A DNA stretch of 12,540 nt from Selaginella moellendorffii (taxonomy: Eukaryota > Plantae > Lycopodiophyta), in NCBI RefSeq assembly GCF_000143415.4, contig NW_003314563.1, positions 1 through 12,540 of the forward strand, given 5' to 3'. Shown here one piece after another: positions 981-12,540 of the stretch; the first letter of the stretch is position 1; each line of letters begins with the position of its first letter. Both the position numbers and the translations under genes were made by a program. The notes below the pieces were generated by a model, which was not told the DNA's origin, did no database searches, and saw nothing but the letters and a program-made list of their open reading frames with translations.

Positions 981-1195
981 TGCAATCAATCAATTGAATC
1001 TGGGAAGTGTGCAACAACCAATCCGGCACAAAAGCACAGCCCCATGCCCCAGTCCACTCTTAGAGCAAACCGGAATTATTTAAAATGAGATATATTTAGC
1101 ATGTAGATTAAGTTTTATACAAAGGCAGGATATAAAACGCAGAAGAAAATCTACTAATTCTGCAATTGTGCAATCATTTTGTAATTTGGAAACAC

Positions 1196-1340
1196 ATGGC
1201 TCAGGTTCAAGGGTAATCAACAGCATCGCAGTTCCAACAATCTGCTTTGGATGGCAACAATACCAACAAGATCAAGCCTGGCCAAGGAGTAAAAACAACA
1301 ACAATAACTTTGCGGCTTCAGCCAGATTGTCAATGTGTGT
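1196..1340 (+). pseudogene. Degenerate CFGW micro-protein (copy A, paralog of 7966-8178)
   Basis: atggctcaggttca, tgctttggatgg (CFGW), caagatcaagcc and tttgcggcttcagccagattgtcaatg (FAASARLSM) match copy D. An early TAA follows the ATG. TATAAAA at 1131-1137 matches 7813-7819. Confidence 0.8.
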
Positions 1341-3344: not shown

Positions 3345-3484
3345 AGAGAGGTACGCCAGCCCTCAAATTACAACGTCCACTCCTCCACTTTGGGAAGATG
3401 GTAGGCCGGCCAAGCCGTAGTGCAATGGGAAAGCCAAACCTAGGCCATTGGCCTTCATAATCACCAATAAACCCCACCCAGGTA
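3345..3484 (-). pseudogene. U1: U1 snRNA pseudogene
   Basis: Near-identical to 8945-9067 over about 120 bp. It lacks the 5' ATACT, the Sm site is truncated (AATTTG-AGGG), SL4 is broken and the USE is deleted. The TATA is retained at 3496-3502. Confidence 0.92.
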
Positions 3485-3589
3485 CAGGCCCTATCTTATA
3501 TAGATAGGGCAAAGATCCGGTCTTTTGGTCAAAGACCTAATCAAACGGTCAACATCTTGACCGCTTTAGTCCATGCCCCGTCGCTTCCG

Positions 3590-5402: not shown

Positions 5403-6213
5403 GGGATGGCTCAATGTGAGTGCTCTCGCCAGTGGGAATAGTCGCGCTGAACCCCTCGCAATTTGCTGCAGCTCTTAGATGCTCGCCGGTTTGGATGCCG
5501 GGAAAAAGCCTCAGTAAGTGTTGTGTTGTTGCCTGCTGCTGGATGGTTTCTCACTCCGTTATTCTTCCTCTCAGCTGTGAGCATCGCGGTGGATGCCTGG
5601 AGGCTGGCCTTAACCGGGCGTTTCAGGCTGATCGACCAGTGGTGCGAGTTTGTGCGAATGCACCATCGCCATGGTATTACCGAAGATACCTGGCGACAAG
5701 TCCTGGAGTTTAGTAGGGTGGTGCACGAGGATTTGAGCAATAACGATTCAGAAGGTAGAGAAAACTTCGCCCTTCGCGTGCTCTGGTCTAACTAACGTAG
5801 CTGCCGCTCCAGGTGCTTGGCCTGTTCTTGTCGACGAGTTTGTGGATCACATGTACAGGTAACACCCGATAGTTCCCTTGCTGGAAAAGAATGGCCGTCC
5901 TCACAAAATCCTCCTGCTTTCAGAAGCTCGTCATGCTCTTGCATTGCGGAAGCCTGCGCTTGCGATCCGAGTGCAGTGCTGAGCTCTTCGGAAGTTTTGG
6001 ATGCTACCTCTCAATTGAACCGAGCGAATACACTACCAGGCAAGAAAACTCGCTCCCACTATGATGTCTACAGATCTATCTCTCTTCACAGGTATGGCTG
6101 CTACCGCCGGTAGTAAGAGGCGGAGGAAAGACACGAACGACGAGGTGTCTTTGTCGCGGCATTTGAAGCGTCTACTGCTGGAGAAACCTCTGCTCATGTC
6201 CGGTGGGTTTTGA
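5403..6213 (+). pseudogene. AAR3: 5'-truncated, frameshifted DCN1-like (AAR3-type) cullin-neddylation gene
   Basis: Exons 5472-5513, 5575-5754, 5813-5858, 5924-6039 and 6092-6213 give AWRLALTGRFRLIDQWCEFV...ITEDTWRQVLEFSRVVHEDL...EGAWPVLVDEFVDHMY...LPG..SKRRRK. The usual FYDFVFF and GQ residues around CRE..KSL are missing, and exon phase is broken at 5513/5575. Confidence 0.85.
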
Positions 6214-6461
6214 CAGATGAGAGCTTTGTAGTAGAGAAAATCTTTTCAATGTATAGTGGTGCCCGAGCGAGCGATGATTCTTTTTCCGCATAACATTCTT
6301 GTGACCGAGAAACACGTGACAATAATATTAATTCTTACTTGTGATCTAGACTCTATTCAAGTCAAAGTCTGGAGTCCTAACAACTCTCTATATTTCTTGG
6401 CTAGCAAGTTAGGACGAAGTATATAATGTGTGCCCTGAGAATTTCTTTCATTTGTTTTGGA

Positions 6462-6686
6462 ATGGCAGCAGGTGGAAACAGCATCAAGATGGACGAGCAA
6501 CAAGAGGTTGCAAAGGTCGATTGTTTTGGATGGATGAGCCAATGGAAATTCAAAGTAGCAAGCAAGGTGGAGAATTCGCAAGATTGGAGCAAGACTATGG
6601 AAAGCAGCAGTGAGTCAAAGAAAAAGAAAAAGGATGCAATTGTCGTGCCTCACTTCTCTTCCTCGCCAAGACTTCCACTCCTGTAA
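6462..6686 (+). CDS. 74-aa micro-protein (copy B), CFGW ... DAIVVPHFSSSPRLPLL
   Basis: Intact ATG-TAA frame with TATATAA at 6420-6426. Two motifs are shared with the diverged paralog at 7966-8178. Confidence 0.7.
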   Translation: MAAGGNSIKMDEQQEVAKVDCFGWMSQWKFKVASKVENSQDWSKTMESSSESKKKKKDAIVVPHFSSSPRLPLL

Positions 6687-6806
6687 TAGTAGAGAAAAGC
6701 TTCCAAATTGTTTGTTCTCCCTCCAAATATCTTCTCTGTTTTAAGATCTGGTACTCAGGATAAGTTGGTCAAGCTAGGATGAATGAGCAGCATCGTATCC
6801 ATTTCC

Positions 6807-7003
6807 AGGACACTTCGTTTGCATGCCGAGTCATTTCTTGGTTTGCACGGAAAGTTTTTTGGACAAGGATTGAAATCAGGAATTCGCAGCAACAGAGCGT
6901 AGAAAATCTAATTCAGCCTTCACGCACGAAGACTATATCCTTTCTTCTCTCCAATTTGTGACTGGCTCAATGGAGTTAGTGCTTTGGATGGAGGAGTAGT
7001 CAA
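6807..7003 (+). pseudogene. Eroded copy (E) of the promoter and 5' part of micro-protein D
   Basis: aggacacttc.tttgcatgccgagtc, gtagaaaat.taattc, tggctcaa and tttggatggaggagtag match 7741-8050. The ATG is lost. Confidence 0.8.
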
Positions 7004-7029
7004 CCCACAATCTGAGTCCTGTTGATTGC

Positions 7030-7216
7030 CCTCACAATATCCAGAAGCTCGTCGTGCTCTTGCATCGCGGAAGCCTTCCGAGTGCCGTGATGAGCTCTTC
7101 GGAAGTTTTGGATGCTACCTACCGAGAGGCAGAGGAAAGACACGAGCGACGAGGTGTCTTTGTCGCGGCATTTGAAGCGTCTACTACTAGAGAAACCTCT
7201 GCTCATGGGTTTTGAT
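7030..7216 (+). pseudogene. Second, eroded copy of the AAR3-like 3' exons
   Basis: Matches 5900-6213, for example gagctcttcggaagttttggatgctacct and gacgaggtgtctttgtcgcggcatttgaagcgtctact, with internal deletions. Confidence 0.9.
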
Positions 7217-7303
7217 AACAAGACAATAATATGAAGCGAATTTTTTTTTTGCACTGTTGTAATCGAGACTCTATTCAAATACAAAACGATCATTGATTTT
7301 GGA

Positions 7304-7457
7304 ATGGCAGCAGGAGTTCAAGGTGGAAACACGGACGAGCAACAAGAGGTTGCAACGAGACAATGGAAATTGAAAGAAGTAGCAAGCAATGTGAGCAAGA
7401 CTATGAAAAGTAGCAGTGAGATGCAATTGTCACTTCTCTAGACTTCCACTCCTGTAA
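7304..7457 (+). pseudogene. Deletion-shortened copy (C) of micro-protein B; residual 45-aa ORF at 7304-7441
   Basis: Reads MAAGVQGGNTDEQQEVATRQWKLKEVASNVSKTMKSSSEMQLSLL*. CFGW is deleted and the C-terminal motif is frameshifted. The tail agacttccactcctgtaatag is identical to copy B. Confidence 0.85.
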
Positions 7458-7675
7458 TAGGCTTCTACATTTTTTATTTTTTGTAATGAAAATAAATCTG
7501 TCATCTTGAACATCTGAATCTGTTCTAAATTTTGGTAGTCCATTTCGTGTGAGGGATGTGATCCTCCCAAAAGCATGGAAATTTAAGATATCTCGATTGA
7601 ATACTGGACGTTAATCTTTTCAATCACATTAAAATTCCAATTAAAACTGCACGTGATAATTTTGCCCTTTGAAAC

Positions 7676-7731
7676 TTTCAAGATATGTCTGGTAAAGCAT
7701 AAGTTTCAAAGATATGTCTGGTAAAGCATAA
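7676..7731. repeat. Tandem duplication, 29-bp period
   Basis: aagatatgtctggtaaagcataa at 7680-7702 and 7709-7731. Confidence 0.9.
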
Positions 7732-7965
7732 CATCACATCAGGACACTTCATTTGCATGCCGAGTCTTTTGCATGCCGTGGTGTGCAAGGAAAGTCTCGT
7801 GGAAAGCCGGGATATAAAACACAGAGGATGGGAAGCTTCAGTGTCAAGAACTCGTAGCGACACAGTGTAGAAAATATAATTCCAGGCTCCAGGCACCAGG
7901 CACCAAGTCCATAGCAATTCTGCAAATTCTTCATTGTCGATTCTCCATTTTGTGATTGGAAACCC

Positions 7966-8178
7966 ATGGCTCAAGTTCATGCTGCGGAGTTGAAGGGCAA
8001 TCTCAGTCCTAACAAGCGCATGGGCTGTTTTGGATGGAGGAGTAGCAGCAACAAGACCAGCAAGATCAAGCCCAAGAAGAATGCCCAAGTCTCAGATGGG
8101 AAGATCAAGGAGAGAAAACAAGAACAACCAATAATTGTTCCATACTTTGCGGCTTCAGCCAAATTGTCAATGCTGTGA
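7966..8178 (+). CDS. 70-aa micro-protein (copy D), MGCFGW ... PIIVPYFAASAKLSML
   Basis: Intact ORF with a good start context (ccATGG) and TATAAAA at 7813-7819. Motifs are shared with copy B. Confidence 0.7.
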   Translation: MAQVHAAELKGNLSPNKRMGCFGWRSSSNKTSKIKPKKNAQVSDGKIKERKQEQPIIVPYFAASAKLSML

Positions 8179-8329
8179 CATGGATTTGCACAGATTCAAG
8201 ATGTTTTCCTTTTCGTCTTGAAGAAGCGAACTTGTAATATATTTTGTTGTTTCATGAATTGAAATCAGTCAAAAAAATCTCTTCAATTCATTCTCAATGA
8301 TCACAAAAATGCTTGTTATCACTTCGCAG

Positions 8330-8838
8330 AAGAACTGAGAATGTGGAAAACTTCAGGTTTTAGGACATCAGTGACATTCTCTCAGCCGCTCACTCACTTT
8401 GCCTTGTAGTCTTCAATCTGAGGCGAAGATCAAGGCGTATAGTGAGGAAAACTACGAGCAAATCCTCGCATCCAGAGCCCGCAAGGTAAGGCGTGTTTTC
8501 GAGGAGAAACAAATCCTTACTCTCTCTCTCTGTCTCACATACACACACAGGCTGTGGAGACTAGCACCGCTCTCCAGCAAGAGCAAGGCTTCACTGAAAC
8601 GAGAGAAGCCGTAGAACAACGAGAAATTCTTTTCAATGGCAGCGAGAATTTGGATAAAAAACAGGGACCTTCTGGAGCGTACGCGCCGGCAGTGGCGGGT
8701 ATGTTGATGCAGCAGCCAACGAGGCAGCCCGAGATTGGCTCAACGGTGGATCCAGAGGCGCAGAGGATTCGAGAGTTGCGAGCCGCCATCGCCGGCAGGA
8801 CAAGCGATCGCTGCTCAATGGATGAAGCAGCAAGCTGA
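8330..8838 (+). CDS. Three spliced exons of an unknown gene, probably 5'-truncated
   Basis: GT-AG introns at 8357-8409 and 8486-8550 join RTENVENF-SLQSEAK...RARK-AVETSTAL...DEAAS* in frame. No clear start exon. Confidence 0.4.
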
Positions 8839-8911: not shown

Positions 8912-9072
8912 GAGAGGGCCGCGCGTACGCGAGCCCTCAACTTCCACAAATTACGACGTCCACTCCTCCACTTTGGGAAGATGGTAGGCCGGCCAAGCCG
9001 TAGTGCAATGGGAAAGCCGAACCTAGGCCATTGGCCTTCATGATCACCAATAAACCCCGTCCAGGTAAGTAT
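8912..9072 (-). ncRNA. U1: U1 spliceosomal snRNA (intact)
   Basis: The minus strand begins ATACTTACCTGGACGGGG. It has loop I GATCATGAAG (U1-70K site), loop II ATTGCAC (U1A site), Sm site AATTTGTGG and SL4 GAGGGC...GCGTACGC...GCCCTC. Length about 161 nt. Confidence 0.97.
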
Positions 9073-9328: not shown

Positions 9329-9728
9329 TGTCACTATGCTCTTAATGGGCTATGGATTGCCCATTAACTTGATCCAACCGTTAGCAGCCATTGGATTGAG
9401 TCAGGTTCTCTGTGAGAACGTGGCTAACAACTGCCAAGTTCTAGAACCTAGCTGCCAGCTGCCAGGTTCTGGAGAACCAGGCTACCAACTGCCAACCTAG
9501 CTGCCAGCTGCCAGGTTCTGGAGAACCAGGCTACCAACTGCCAATTCTAGAGAACCCTCTCATCCTCGAATAATATTCTTCCACGTATCCGTTAACAGTC
9601 TTGTCACAGCCCGTTAAAGCCGTTCCCGGGCACGGGCTCGCTCGTTCCCGCCCAAAACAGGCAAGCCGGGCATTACCAAAATGCGCTCCCCAGGCTAACG
9701 CCTGGCTTGCCCATTCTAGGCGGGAACA
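9329..9728. mobile_element. Insertion absent from PPR copy 1; possible LTR or MITE remnant(s)
   Basis: TGTCAC at 9329 and 9602 and ...AACA at 9597 and 9728 give TG...CA-like ends. Internal palindromic repeats are present. No matching TSD was found. Confidence 0.35.
9445..9544. repeat. Perfect 49-bp tandem duplication containing a GGTTCT-gg-AGAACC palindrome
   Basis: aacctagctgccagctgccaggttctggagaaccaggctaccaactgcc at 9445 and 9494. Confidence 0.95.
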
Positions 9729-10226: not shown

Positions 10227-10299
10227 CGCCGACCGTGGGGCTCGAACCCACGACCACAAGGTTAAGAGCCTTGCGCTCTACCAGCTGAGCTAGGCCGGC
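10227..10299 (-). tRNA. tRNA-Lys-CTT: tRNA-Lys(CTT), nuclear, intronless
   Basis: GCCGGCCTAGCTCAGCTGGTAGAGCGCAAGGCTCTTAACCTTGTGGTCGTGGGTTCGAGCCCCACGGTCGGCG forms a 73-nt cloverleaf with a 7-bp acceptor stem, anticodon CTT, A and B boxes, and no encoded CCA. Confidence 0.98.
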
Positions 10300-11343: not shown

Positions 11344-12540
11344 ATGCAGCAGGGCGAGAAGATTTCGGTCGCGATCCGGGTGAGGCCGCCGATCAGGCAG
11401 GAGCTTGTGAGAGGCAGCCAATGGAAGCTTGGGGCTAGAACGATCGCACTGTACAATGCGCTCGGCGCACCTGTGCTGGGTCAATCCTACATGTTTGGTA
11501 AGTAGGGCATTGATTGTGATTGATCGTGTTCTCCGTTTCGATAGATCAAATATTTACCAAGGATGCGACCAATGCAAGCGTGTATGAGATCCATGCCAAG
11601 GATCTCGTTCTATCTGGGCTTCAAGGATTCAATGGTCTCTTTCGTTTTTCAGAGTTGTTTGGCTCTCATTGTTTTTTTTTTCCCTTTTCCTTATTTTTGT
11701 TGCTCCAGGAACAATTTTTGCTTATGGCCAAACCAGCAGTGGCAAAACCTATACAATGCGTGGGTCTGAGCGGGATCCTGGGCTTATCCATCGTGCTATA
11801 TGCGACGTTTTCAGCACCATTCAGAGTGTTTGTGTAATTAAATCTGTTCTCTGTGGAGCTTATTTGCTTCTTTGCAGATACTAGACAGGGAGTTCTTGAT
11901 TCGGGTTTCATACATGGAAATATACAAGGAAGAAATCAACGACTTGCTTGCTCCTGAAAATCGGAAGCTTCGGATACATGAAAACTCCGTCGTATGTATT
12001 TTGATTGATCCTGTTTGTGTTTTGGACTTTACTGAAAAGAGCTTCAGAGGGGGATTTTTGTGGCAGGATTACGCGAAGAGATTGTGAGCAGTCCAGATCA
12101 GGTCTTTGAGTTCCTCAAATTTGGAGAAGGTAAGCGTCAGATTGAAATGCCTAGAAATTATTGTTTGTTAACTTTCAGCTTACCGTCACTTCGGGAAAAC
12201 CAACATGAATGTTTACAGTAGTCGATCTCATACCATATTCCGCATGGTTAATATGTTTTTCCTCTGTCAAAGTCAAAGTTGATTCAGTCTTTGTTTGTAA
12301 CAGGTAATTGAAAGCAGGGACAAGAAAAACGATGGTCAAGACGATGCATTGGACGCAGTTCGCGTGTCAACTCTCGTAAGTTGCTTAAATTTCGTTTCTG
12401 GTAACCTGACAGTTTGTTTTCCGAAGAATATGGTAGATCTTGCAGGCTCGGAGCGCATCGCCAAAACTGGGGCTGGTGGTGTTCGTCTCAAAGAAGGGAC
12501 GCATATCAACAAATCCTTGATGACACTTGGAACCGTATCA
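11344..12540 (+). CDS. KIN7N: Kinesin-7 (CENP-E-like; KIN7N/ZCF125-like) motor domain, 3'-partial
   Basis: Exons 11344-11497, 11545-11634, 11709-11827, 11878-11991, 12048-12129, 12179-12246, 12304-12375 and 12427-end, all with GT-AG introns. Motifs: [12 protein letters not shown]-loop GQTSSGKT, switch I SSRSH, switch [28 protein letters not shown]. Confidence 0.93.

What the first reader, a model, noticed from the sequence alone, without database searches (positions are those of the whole stretch)
6462..8178. Clustered family of ~70-aa micro-proteins with CFGW and a conserved C-terminal motif
B (..DCFGW..KKKKKDAIVVPHFSSSPRLPLL*) and D (..MGCFGW..KERKQEQPIIVPYFAASAKLSML*) differ in the middle. 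Both keep CFGW, a Lys/Ser-rich linker, a basic patch and I(V/I)VP(H/Y)F-x5-LxxL at identical distance from the stop. Five copies (A-E) occur in the window. Short, probably disordered proteins with two linear motifs look like adaptors, inhibitors or peptide precursors, and annotation easily misses them. D ends in SML, a PTS1-like tripeptide, and its second ATG (8020) would give an MGC acylation start. I recall similar C-termini in uncharacterised small plant proteins but cannot verify this. This is the best candidate for an undescribed system here.
Basis: partly seen in the sequence, partly recalled or inferred. Interest (0 to 1): 0.75.

Follow-up and report, generated by a model that had tools for sequence, protein, structure and literature searches.

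The report
Spikemoss orphan small-ORF pair beside MAT1
Two related ~70-codon reading frames found only in the spikemoss Selaginella moellendorffii sit just upstream of the cell-cycle gene MAT1; they look like real but unproven tiny genes, and the other three "copies" in the window are decayed duplicates.

Summary
The window appears to be a whole 12,540-bp contig of Selaginella moellendorffii. ORF B (6462-6686) and ORF D (7966-8178) are intact and truly homologous. They align from start to stop and share CFGW, a basic patch and AI[IV]VP[HY]F-x5-LxxL-stop. The Smith-Waterman score is 71, against 26.7±5.2 for 20,000 shuffles. Six conserved C-terminal residues use different codons. A, C and E are decayed fragments.

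All five copies descend from two ancestral ORFs lying between a DCN1-like gene and MAT1. A ~1.1-kb tandem duplication and then duplication of the whole block multiplied them.

Across six genomic copies, D keeps its start, stop and frame. It has one in-frame indel, against 36 indels in 1,038 flanking columns (p≈0.004-0.02). dN/dS is about 0.43 (p≈0.05). B is damaged in both canonical loci.

GenBank already uses most of D as exon 1 of fused "hypothetical/MAT1" models. Those models look wrong.

No relatives turned up in any of the protein and metagenome searches run. AlphaFold2 predicts disorder. The PTS1 and MGC-acylation ideas do not hold for the family.

Best reading: a lineage-restricted micro-protein pair. 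Main rival: D is a peptide uORF of MAT1, whose start codon lies 207 nt downstream. I had no expression data. The scan had not noted this family elsewhere.

The parts
1121..1339 (+). Copy A: decayed D-type copy. It keeps the TATA-like box, the ATG, CFGW and the last ~11 codons. It has internal deletions and a premature stop.
   Evidence: blastn and tblastn against D; three-way alignment
5426..6213 (+). 3' part of a DCN1-like (Cullin_binding) gene. Its stop codon is at 6211-6213, 249 nt before the ATG of B.
   Evidence: Pfam PF03556 hit; 92% identical to the 259-aa DCN1-like gene of L004 and L005
6420..6426 (+). TATATAA box 42 nt upstream of the ATG of B. It is present in all four B copies, at 42-67 nt.
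6462..6686 (+). ORF B: intact B-type micro-ORF of 74 codons plus stop.
6803..7000 (+). Copy E: 5' fragment of a D-type unit (upstream region plus CFGWRSS). It is cut off at the junction of the ~1.1-kb tandem duplication. Its TATA box is mutated and its frame is broken.
7042..7207 (+). Duplicated fragment of the DCN1-like 3' end. It marks the start of the second tandem unit.
   Evidence: repeat families D2, D5 and D7
7290..7460 (+). Copy C: decayed B-type copy. Deletions have removed CFGW and IVVP. It is decayed in every locus examined.
7740..7819 (+). Upstream region of D. It holds a 31-nt element (7740-7770) that is 94% identical to 6806-6836, and a TATAAAA box at 7813-7819, 153 nt before the ATG. 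The box is kept in all six D copies and in A.
7966..8178 (+). ORF D: intact D-type micro-ORF of 70 codons plus stop (73 codons in the other five copies).
8362..8838 (+). Remnants of MAT1 exons. The first three exons, including the start codon, are missing and the C-terminus is changed. This is a dead MAT1 copy downstream of D.

Best explanation
B and D are the two members of a micro-protein family seen so far only in Selaginella moellendorffii.

**Origin (shown by comparing loci).** An old tandem duplication of one small gene between the DCN1-like gene and MAT1 gave a B-type and a D-type ORF. A later ~1.1-kb tandem duplication then produced the order DCN1 - B - E - DCN1 fragment - C - D - MAT1. 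Finally the whole block was copied to several places in the genome. Redundant copies (C, E, A) decayed by small deletions.

**How it probably works (inferred).** Each intact ORF is transcribed from its own TATA-type promoter. It is translated into a basic, disordered peptide of about 70 residues. That peptide would act in trans through two short linear motifs:
- an N-proximal CFGW;
- a C-terminal module made of a basic patch followed by AI[IV]VP[HY]F-xxSx[RK]LxxL-COOH.

The lysine clusters resemble nuclear localisation signals. I therefore guess it is a small docking or adaptor peptide, possibly nuclear. Its partner is unknown. D's transcript may run into or overlap the MAT1 promoter and leader.
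For: **Homology at protein level.**
- B and D align from start to stop with z≈8.5; 0 of 20,000 shuffles reach the observed score.
- Their DNA is only 50% identical in the codon alignment.
- 10 of the 25 identical positions use different codons, counting the two different stop codons. In the C-terminal motif these are I, V, P, F, S and L. That pattern indicates selection on the peptide.
- The antisense frames are not conserved (read directly from the sequences).

**Frame conservation of D.**
- The start, stop and frame are intact in 6 of 6 genomic copies.
- There is 1 indel (9 nt, in frame) in 222 ORF columns, against 36 indels (26 of them frame-shifting) in 1,038 flanking columns. Poisson p = 0.004, or 0.018 if only 28 events are counted.
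- There are 14 non-synonymous and 8 synonymous changes, giving omega ≈ 0.43 (p = 0.05).
- The motif core is unchanged in five of the six D copies. L001 has W for the Cys of CFGW, and Y/H varies at the fifth motif position.
- D stays intact in three blocks where MAT1 is dead: the window, L002 and L003.

**Points favouring a trans-acting peptide over a cis-acting one.**
- CFGW lies about 45-50 residues from the C-terminus. From general knowledge, the ribosomal exit tunnel holds about 30-40 residues, so CFGW would be outside it.
- B is not directly upstream of any main ORF.
- Both ORFs have TATA boxes at plausible distances.
- There are 9-11 ATGs between D's ATG and the MAT1 ATG, against 8.4±2.6 expected. 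This is no AUG depletion, unlike genuine leaky-scanning bicistrons (PMC11291117).
Against: - No transcript, Ribo-seq or peptide evidence was available.
- I found no homologue outside this one species. The searches covered HMMER over 1.84 billion representatives, a word search over 5.8 billion proteins, the ESM Atlas and JGI metagenomes. Plant genome DNA could not be searched.
- B is damaged in both canonical loci. In L004 an 11-nt deletion removes the ATG. In L005 a +1 insertion removes the last five residues.
- dN/dS among the D paralogues is only weakly below 1.
- The flanks are nearly as well conserved as the ORF in substitutions: 9.0 against about 12 variable columns per 100.
- One D copy (L001) has lost the Cys of CFGW.
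- Only 207 nt separate D's stop from the MAT1 ATG. That is little room for a separate 3' end plus a promoter.
Confidence: 0.4

Rival explanations
1. D, and ancestrally perhaps B too, is an upstream ORF in the 5' leader of the MAT1 mRNA. MAT1 is the assembly factor of the CDK-activating kinase. Under this reading, the conserved C-terminal peptide acts in cis as a nascent chain that stalls the ribosome at or near the fixed stop codon. That would throttle MAT1 translation.
For: - D is on the same strand as MAT1. It ends 207 nt before the MAT1 ATG in both canonical loci and about 219 nt before it in L001. This is very short for a terminator plus a promoter plus a leader.
- Conservation is strongest in the last 17 residues, and the distance to the stop is fixed. 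That is the pattern described for termination-stalling plant CPuORFs such as AT1G70780 (PMC5587730).
- D and MAT1 were always duplicated together.
- A cDNA-like MAT1 contig from another plant has a 1,262-nt leader with several sizeable ORFs.
Against: - No transcript data were available.
- The leader would hold 9-11 AUGs and a 73-codon uORF. By general knowledge of scanning and reinitiation, that would almost abolish MAT1 translation.
- CFGW, far from the C-terminus, is also conserved.
- B carries the same motifs but has no main ORF behind it.
- D's frame is kept in blocks where MAT1 is dead, although this is not significant on its own (p≈0.08).
- No similar ORF lies upstream of MAT1 in the two other loci I could obtain.
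Confidence: 0.25
2. The ORFs are relics. A small gene family that was once selected is now decaying or neutral. The copies that are still open are simply young duplicates that have not yet been hit.
For: - Three of the five copies in the window are dead.
- B is damaged in both canonical loci.
- The D paralogues differ by only 2-6%, so intactness is weak evidence.
- omega ≈ 0.43 is only borderline significant.
- Non-coding flanks are almost as conserved as the ORF in substitutions.
- No stand-alone annotation and no relatives were found.
Against: - Indels are depleted about seven-fold in the D ORF relative to its flanks, and the single one is in frame.
- The motifs survived a B/D divergence at which the DNA no longer aligns outside CFGW.
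- An intact B is seen in both distal blocks (the window and L002).
- D is intact in every block.
Confidence: 0.25
3. D is the true first coding exon of MAT1-like proteins, as in the GenBank models SELMODRAFT_432407, 408886, 404242 and 428018. In those models an intron removes D's last four codons and its stop.
For: Four GenBank gene models join D's first ~66-69 codons to downstream MAT1 exons.
Against: - In the canonical loci L004 and L005, the frame entered through that proposed splice meets a TAG 18 nt before the MAT1 ATG.
- The canonical MAT1 proteins (SELMODRAFT_230282 and 440128) and a MAT1 from another plant all start at MNKE.
- B and D are similar right up to their own stop codons.
- The proposed donor site (TT|GTCAAT) is weak.
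- Three of the four fused models sit on dead MAT1 copies.
Confidence: 0.05

Closest known systems
CDC26/TTM3 bicistronic locus of plants and green algae (a 65-aa APC/C subunit encoded upstream of TTM3 on one mRNA; described in PMC11291117 and its reference 11)
   Same: - A small ORF of about 65-73 codons lies immediately upstream of, and on the same strand as, a gene for a larger protein.
- The neighbouring gene has a cell-cycle role.
- The small ORF could be both a functional protein and a uORF.
   Different: - CDC26/TTM3 is conserved from algae to angiosperms and shown to be one transcript. Here no transcript evidence exists and the ORF is known from one species only.
- Genuine bicistrons show a bias against AUGs upstream of ORF 2. 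Here there are 9-11 AUGs, as expected by chance.
- There is no sequence similarity to CDC26 (no Pfam hit).
Plant conserved-peptide uORFs (CPuORFs), for example the termination-stalling uORF of AT1G70780 (PMC5587730)
   Same: - The C-terminal peptide region is conserved.
- The stop position is fixed.
- The ORF sits shortly upstream of a main ORF.
- The length is tens of codons.
   Different: - CPuORFs are defined by conservation between orthologous mRNAs of different species. This could not be shown here.
- A second conserved motif (CFGW) lies outside the likely tunnel-resident segment.
- The paralogue B has no main ORF behind it.
- I found no CPuORF paper that mentions the Arabidopsis locus At4g30820, which from memory is the MAT1-like gene.
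Lineage-restricted ('orphan') micro-proteins or sORF-encoded peptides in general
   Same: - Under 100 codons, disordered, no Pfam family.
- Missed or mis-joined by gene prediction.
- Tandemly duplicated.
   Different: Nothing distinguishes it from this loose class except the specific motif pair. Function and expression are untested.

Membership tests
Conserved-peptide uORF (CPuORF) | The ORF lies in the 5' leader of the main-ORF mRNA | not testable with these tools
   No transcript or EST data were available. Only the geometry is known: the stop is 207 nt before the MAT1 ATG and a TATA box lies 153 nt before D's ATG.
Conserved-peptide uORF (CPuORF) | The peptide sequence is conserved upstream of orthologous genes in other species | tested here: inconclusive
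   No CFGW/VPxF ORF lies upstream of MAT1 in L006 or L007. No other lycophyte genome could be searched.
Bicistronic small-protein locus translated by leaky scanning (CDC26/TTM3 type) | AUG codons are depleted between the first AUG and ORF 2 | tested here: not met
   9-11 ATGs in 418-440 nt, against 8.4±2.6 in shuffles.
PTS1-targeted peroxisomal proteins | A C-terminal tripeptide of the [SA][KR][LM] type or an accepted variant, shared by the family | tested here: not met
   All six D copies end in SML, but the B copies with an intact C-terminus end in PLL. That SML is an accepted plant variant rests on my memory only.
N-myristoylated/S-acylated MGC-start proteins | An initiator Met followed by Gly, with a small residue at position 6, conserved in the family | tested here: not met
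   MGC occurs only at D's internal Met19. The residue at position 6 is Trp, which the PROSITE myristoylation pattern excludes (from memory). L001 has MGW and B has VDC.
Secreted peptide precursors | An N-terminal hydrophobic signal peptide | tested here: not met
   Neither N-terminus has a hydrophobic stretch. GRAVY is -0.66 to -0.81. This was judged by inspection; no signal-peptide predictor was run.
MAT1 (PF06391) proteins, with D as an N-terminal extension as in the GenBank models | An open reading frame continuous from D into the MAT1 domain in the functional loci | tested here: not met
   In L004 and L005 an in-frame TAG lies 18 nt before the MAT1 ATG. D has its own conserved stop. MAT1 proteins start at MNKE.
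Any Pfam family | A match at the gathering threshold | tested here: not met
   Only sub-threshold chance hits for B and D, at E = 0.06-0.07.

The most novel reading that the evidence does not exclude
D is a lycophyte-specific peptide cistron in the MAT1 leader. Its conserved C-terminal 17 residues would stall the ribosome at the fixed stop codon. Translation of the CDK-activating-kinase assembly factor would then be gated by a nascent peptide, and possibly by a metabolite or signal sensed through the CFGW segment. B would be a duplicated second sensor or a trans-acting offshoot.
Probability: 0.2. Interest if true: 0.6.

Novelty: new variant of a known kind. Interest (0 to 1): 0.35.

Why it matters
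If the peptides are made, this is a new micro-protein family restricted to one lineage. It has two clean linear motifs and is wrongly fused to MAT1 in GenBank. It would be a useful case of how small genes arise, duplicate and decay in a compact early-diverging plant genome.

If D is instead a uORF, it would be translational control of the CAK assembly factor MAT1. A full-text search for 'CPuORF' together with At4g30820, which from memory is the Arabidopsis MAT1-like locus, found no paper.

Either way, the practical result is a correction. Four GenBank "hypothetical protein" models join an independent small ORF to MAT1 copies, three of which are dead.

The stakes are modest. The family is known from one species, there is no expression evidence, and no wider question depends on it.

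Tried and rejected
**Searches that found nothing or nothing useful.**
- Word-indexed protein search with D alone and with the 10-sequence B+D alignment at E ≤ 10: nothing.
- HMMER profile of B+D against 1.84 billion representatives: only the fused S. moellendorffii models, plus one low-complexity repeat protein (P0004) that I dismissed.
- ESM Atlas for D and B: no usable hit.
- Exact-sequence look-ups of twelve ORF variants: none is on record as a stand-alone protein.
- JGI metagenome scan with the B+D alignment: nothing. The patterns the tool chose were not the conserved motifs.
- I considered a hand-made DNA pattern scan. I dropped it because the pattern rules would force exact codons or yield thousands of chance hits.
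- A second metagenome scan, with MAT1, gave one more MAT1 locus (L007). It has no related upstream ORF.
- Rfam found no RNA family inside 5900-8400.
- The repeat finder reported no inverted repeats in the window at a minimum length of 30. I ran no dedicated transposon test.
- Literature searches for MGCFGW, for CPuORF together with At4g30820, and for Selaginella small ORFs found nothing relevant.
- The scan's own notes hold nothing on this family.

**Analyses that did not help.**
- AlphaFold2 with the 10-row alignment gave a disordered model, so I ran no fold search.
- L008, the locus of RefSeq LOC112346639, has MAT1, U1 and PPR remnants but no B or D copy.

**Motif ideas considered by eye and rejected as not fitting both paralogues.**
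- PP1 RVxF.
- LIR/AIM.
- EAR.
- Cyclin RxL.
- PDZ class I.

A MAPK D-site-like pattern (basic cluster followed by hydrophobic-x-hydrophobic) fits both paralogues. It is too degenerate to count as evidence.
Full report
**What the window is.** Base composition, intron-split genes and the neighbouring genes mark it as plant nuclear DNA. These include kinesin, PPR, DCN1-like, MAT1, U1 snRNA and tRNA-Lys. Every protein model that matches it comes from Selaginella moellendorffii. The GenBank model SELMODRAFT_432407 (P0007) lies on a single contig of 12,540 nt. That is exactly the window length, so the window appears to be that whole contig.

**Checking the observation.**
- Their local alignment scores 71, against 26.7±5.2 (maximum 61) for 20,000 shuffles of B. 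It runs to both C-termini.
- In an alignment of all genomic copies, the two types match from the initiator Met to the stop. The shared features are MA, a QQE patch, CFGW, a Lys/Ser-rich linker, a basic cluster, and AI[IV]VP[HY]F-xxSx[RK]LxxL.
- At the DNA level B and D are only 50% identical in the codon alignment. Ten of the 25 identical positions use different codons, counting the two different stop codons. In the C-terminal motif these are I, V, P, F, S and L. So the conservation is at protein level and on the + strand.
- The antisense frames of the two motifs are unrelated, and one contains a stop (read).
- The other three "copies" are not micro-proteins.
  - C (7290-7460) is B-type with deletions that remove CFGW and IVVP.
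  - E (6803-7000) is the 5' end of a D-type unit with a broken frame and a mutated TATA box.
  - A (1121-1339) is D-type with internal deletions and an early stop.

**Where the copies come from.** A HMMER profile of B+D against 1.84 billion protein representatives found only three S. moellendorffii models. In each, the first ~69 residues are D-type and are joined to MAT1 sequence. I fetched those loci and the two loci of the intact MAT1 genes (P0005 and P0006). Every block has the same order:

DCN1-like gene - B - E - fragment of the DCN1 3' end - C - D - MAT1

- Within each block, the segment from the DCN1 3' end to the CFGWRSS codons of the D-type ORF is present twice. It is about 1.1 kb long and the two copies are about 78% identical (repeat families D2, D5, D7 and D11).
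- One tandem duplication explains this. Its end points lay in the DCN1 3' end and just after CFGWRSS.
  - It explains why E is a truncated 5' half.
  - It explains why there are two B-type copies.
  - It explains why there is only one complete D.
- C carries the same deletions in all loci, so it decayed before the block itself was copied around the genome.
- L002 and L005 overlap on one scaffold. The dead-MAT1 block lies about 6 kb downstream of the intact one.
- A belongs to yet another block copy at the left end of the window. It is followed by MAT1 debris and a PDDEXK_6-type gene, as in L001 and L003.

**Is D under selection?**
- All six D copies (window, L001-L005) keep the same ATG, frame and stop. 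They have 73 codons; the window copy has lost 9 nt in frame.
- In a six-way alignment, the 222 ORF columns hold one indel (9 nt). The 1,038 flanking columns hold 36 internal indel events, 26 of which would shift a frame.
  - Poisson P(≤1) is 0.004, or 0.018 if near-coincident events are merged down to 28.
  - P(no frame-shifting indel) is 0.004.
- Substitutions are only mildly rarer in the ORF: 9.0 against about 12 variable columns per 100.
- By parsimony there are 14 non-synonymous and 8 synonymous changes. That gives omega ≈ 0.43 and a binomial p of 0.05, which is optimistic because transition bias is ignored.
- FGW, the residues I-I-V-P-x-F of the C-terminal motif, and the terminal L-x-x-L are unchanged in all six copies. 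One copy (L001) has W for the Cys.
- MAT1 is intact in L004 and L005 and probably in L001. It is dead in the window, L002 and L003. D stays open there too, though for those lineages alone the indel test is not significant (about 0.08, my count).

**B is less well kept.** It is intact in the window and in L002. In L004 an 11-nt deletion removes the ATG, although an in-frame Met at codon 10 survives before CFGW. In L005 a one-base insertion in an A-run replaces the last five residues. That last lesion could be a sequencing error.

**Relation to MAT1.**
- In the canonical loci, D's stop lies 207 nt upstream of the MAT1 ATG on the same strand.
- The GenBank fusions splice out D's last four codons and its stop. 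In L004 and L005 the frame reached that way hits a TAG 18 nt before the MAT1 ATG.
- The intact MAT1 proteins, and a MAT1 from another plant, start at MNKE.
- B and D resemble each other right up to their own stop codons.
- I therefore reject D as a MAT1 exon. The fused models look like prediction artefacts. Three of the four sit on dead MAT1 copies. I built and searched no spliced or joined model of my own.

**uORF or separate gene?**
- For a uORF:
  - the 207-nt gap is very short;
  - the conserved C-terminus with a fixed stop is the pattern described for termination-stalling plant CPuORFs (PMC5587730).
- Against a uORF:
  - there are 9-11 AUGs between D's AUG and the MAT1 AUG, against 8.4±2.6 expected, whereas genuine leaky-scanning bicistrons avoid such AUGs (PMC11291117);
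  - reinitiation after 73 codons should be poor (general knowledge);
  - CFGW lies 45-50 residues from the C-terminus;
  - B carries the same motifs with no main ORF behind it;
  - both ORFs have their own TATA-like boxes, 153 nt and 42-67 nt upstream;
  - two MAT1 loci from other organisms show no related upstream ORF.
- Without transcript data this cannot be settled. I put a trans-acting micro-protein at 0.40, a MAT1 uORF at 0.25, relics at 0.25 and a MAT1 exon at 0.05.

**Nature of the peptide.**
- There is no Pfam family, no relatives and no Atlas neighbours.
- AlphaFold2 gives mean pLDDT 59.7, pTM 0.12 and no secondary structure.
- pI is 9.2-10.6 and GRAVY about -0.7.
- There is no signal peptide by inspection.
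- The PTS1 idea fails at family level: D ends in SML and B in PLL.
- The MGC acylation idea also fails. It applies only to D's second Met, which is followed by an unfavourable Trp at position 6. L001 has MGW, and B lacks the motif altogether.
- The lysine clusters resemble nuclear localisation signals. The basic cluster followed by a hydrophobic-x-hydrophobic pattern resembles a kinase docking site. Both are weak inferences from degenerate patterns.

**Novelty and verdict.** The "five-copy family" is two genes plus the debris of duplications. The family is known only from this species, and only in the blocks that contain MAT1 or its remnants. Most of D is already in GenBank inside wrong fused models. 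B is not covered by any called gene in the fetched loci, and its exact sequence is not in the protein collection. It is a candidate orphan micro-protein or uORF with moderate evidence of frame conservation and no expression evidence. Interest is modest (0.35).

Noticed in passing
window 8912-9072 (-) and 3359-3489 (-): A full-length U1 snRNA gene (136.8 bits) and a decayed second copy (71.2 bits, just above the gathering score). Each lies just downstream of MAT1 remnants. So the U1 gene is part of the duplicated block.
   Followed up: partly
window 10227-10299 (-) and 97-139: A tRNA-Lys(CTT) gene, and a 43-nt fragment at the left end of the window that is 95% identical to part of it. Together with the kinesin-exon repeats (182-288 against 12357-12503), this shows that the contig's two ends are copies of one segment.
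   Followed up: partly
window 7740-7770 and 6806-6836; also all D loci (alignment A2): A 31-nt element containing TTTGCATGCC (an RY/Sph-like core) is 94% identical between the D and E upstream regions, although those regions are only about 78% alike overall. It is duplicated in tandem in the window copy. It may be a promoter element of the D-type unit.
   Followed up: no
GenBank models SELMODRAFT_432407 (this contig), 408886 (L002), 404242 (L003), 428018 (L001): All four models fuse the small ORF D to MAT1 exons or MAT1 debris through a weak splice site. Three sit on dead MAT1 copies. RefSeq LOC112346639 (L008) is likewise a model built on MAT1 debris, partly out of frame.
   Followed up: yes
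L006 (JGI sample 3300013314, 1,943-nt contig): An intron-less, cDNA-like contig encodes a MAT1 homologue that is 61% identical over its best local alignment (about a third of the query; 48% over the full length). It is preceded by a 1,262-nt leader with ORFs of 85 and 63 codons that are unrelated to B and D. MAT1 mRNAs of non-seed plants may generally have long leaders rich in uORFs, or the contig is chimeric.
   Followed up: partly
window 7977-8162 (-): The antisense strand of D gives a 61-codon Leu-rich ORF that looks like a transmembrane protein. It is a by-product of reading Lys/Ser codons backwards and is not conserved in B's antisense strand.
   Followed up: yes
window 9445-9542: A perfect 49-nt tandem duplication (2 copies, 100% identical) between the U1 gene and the PPR-like region.
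   Followed up: no
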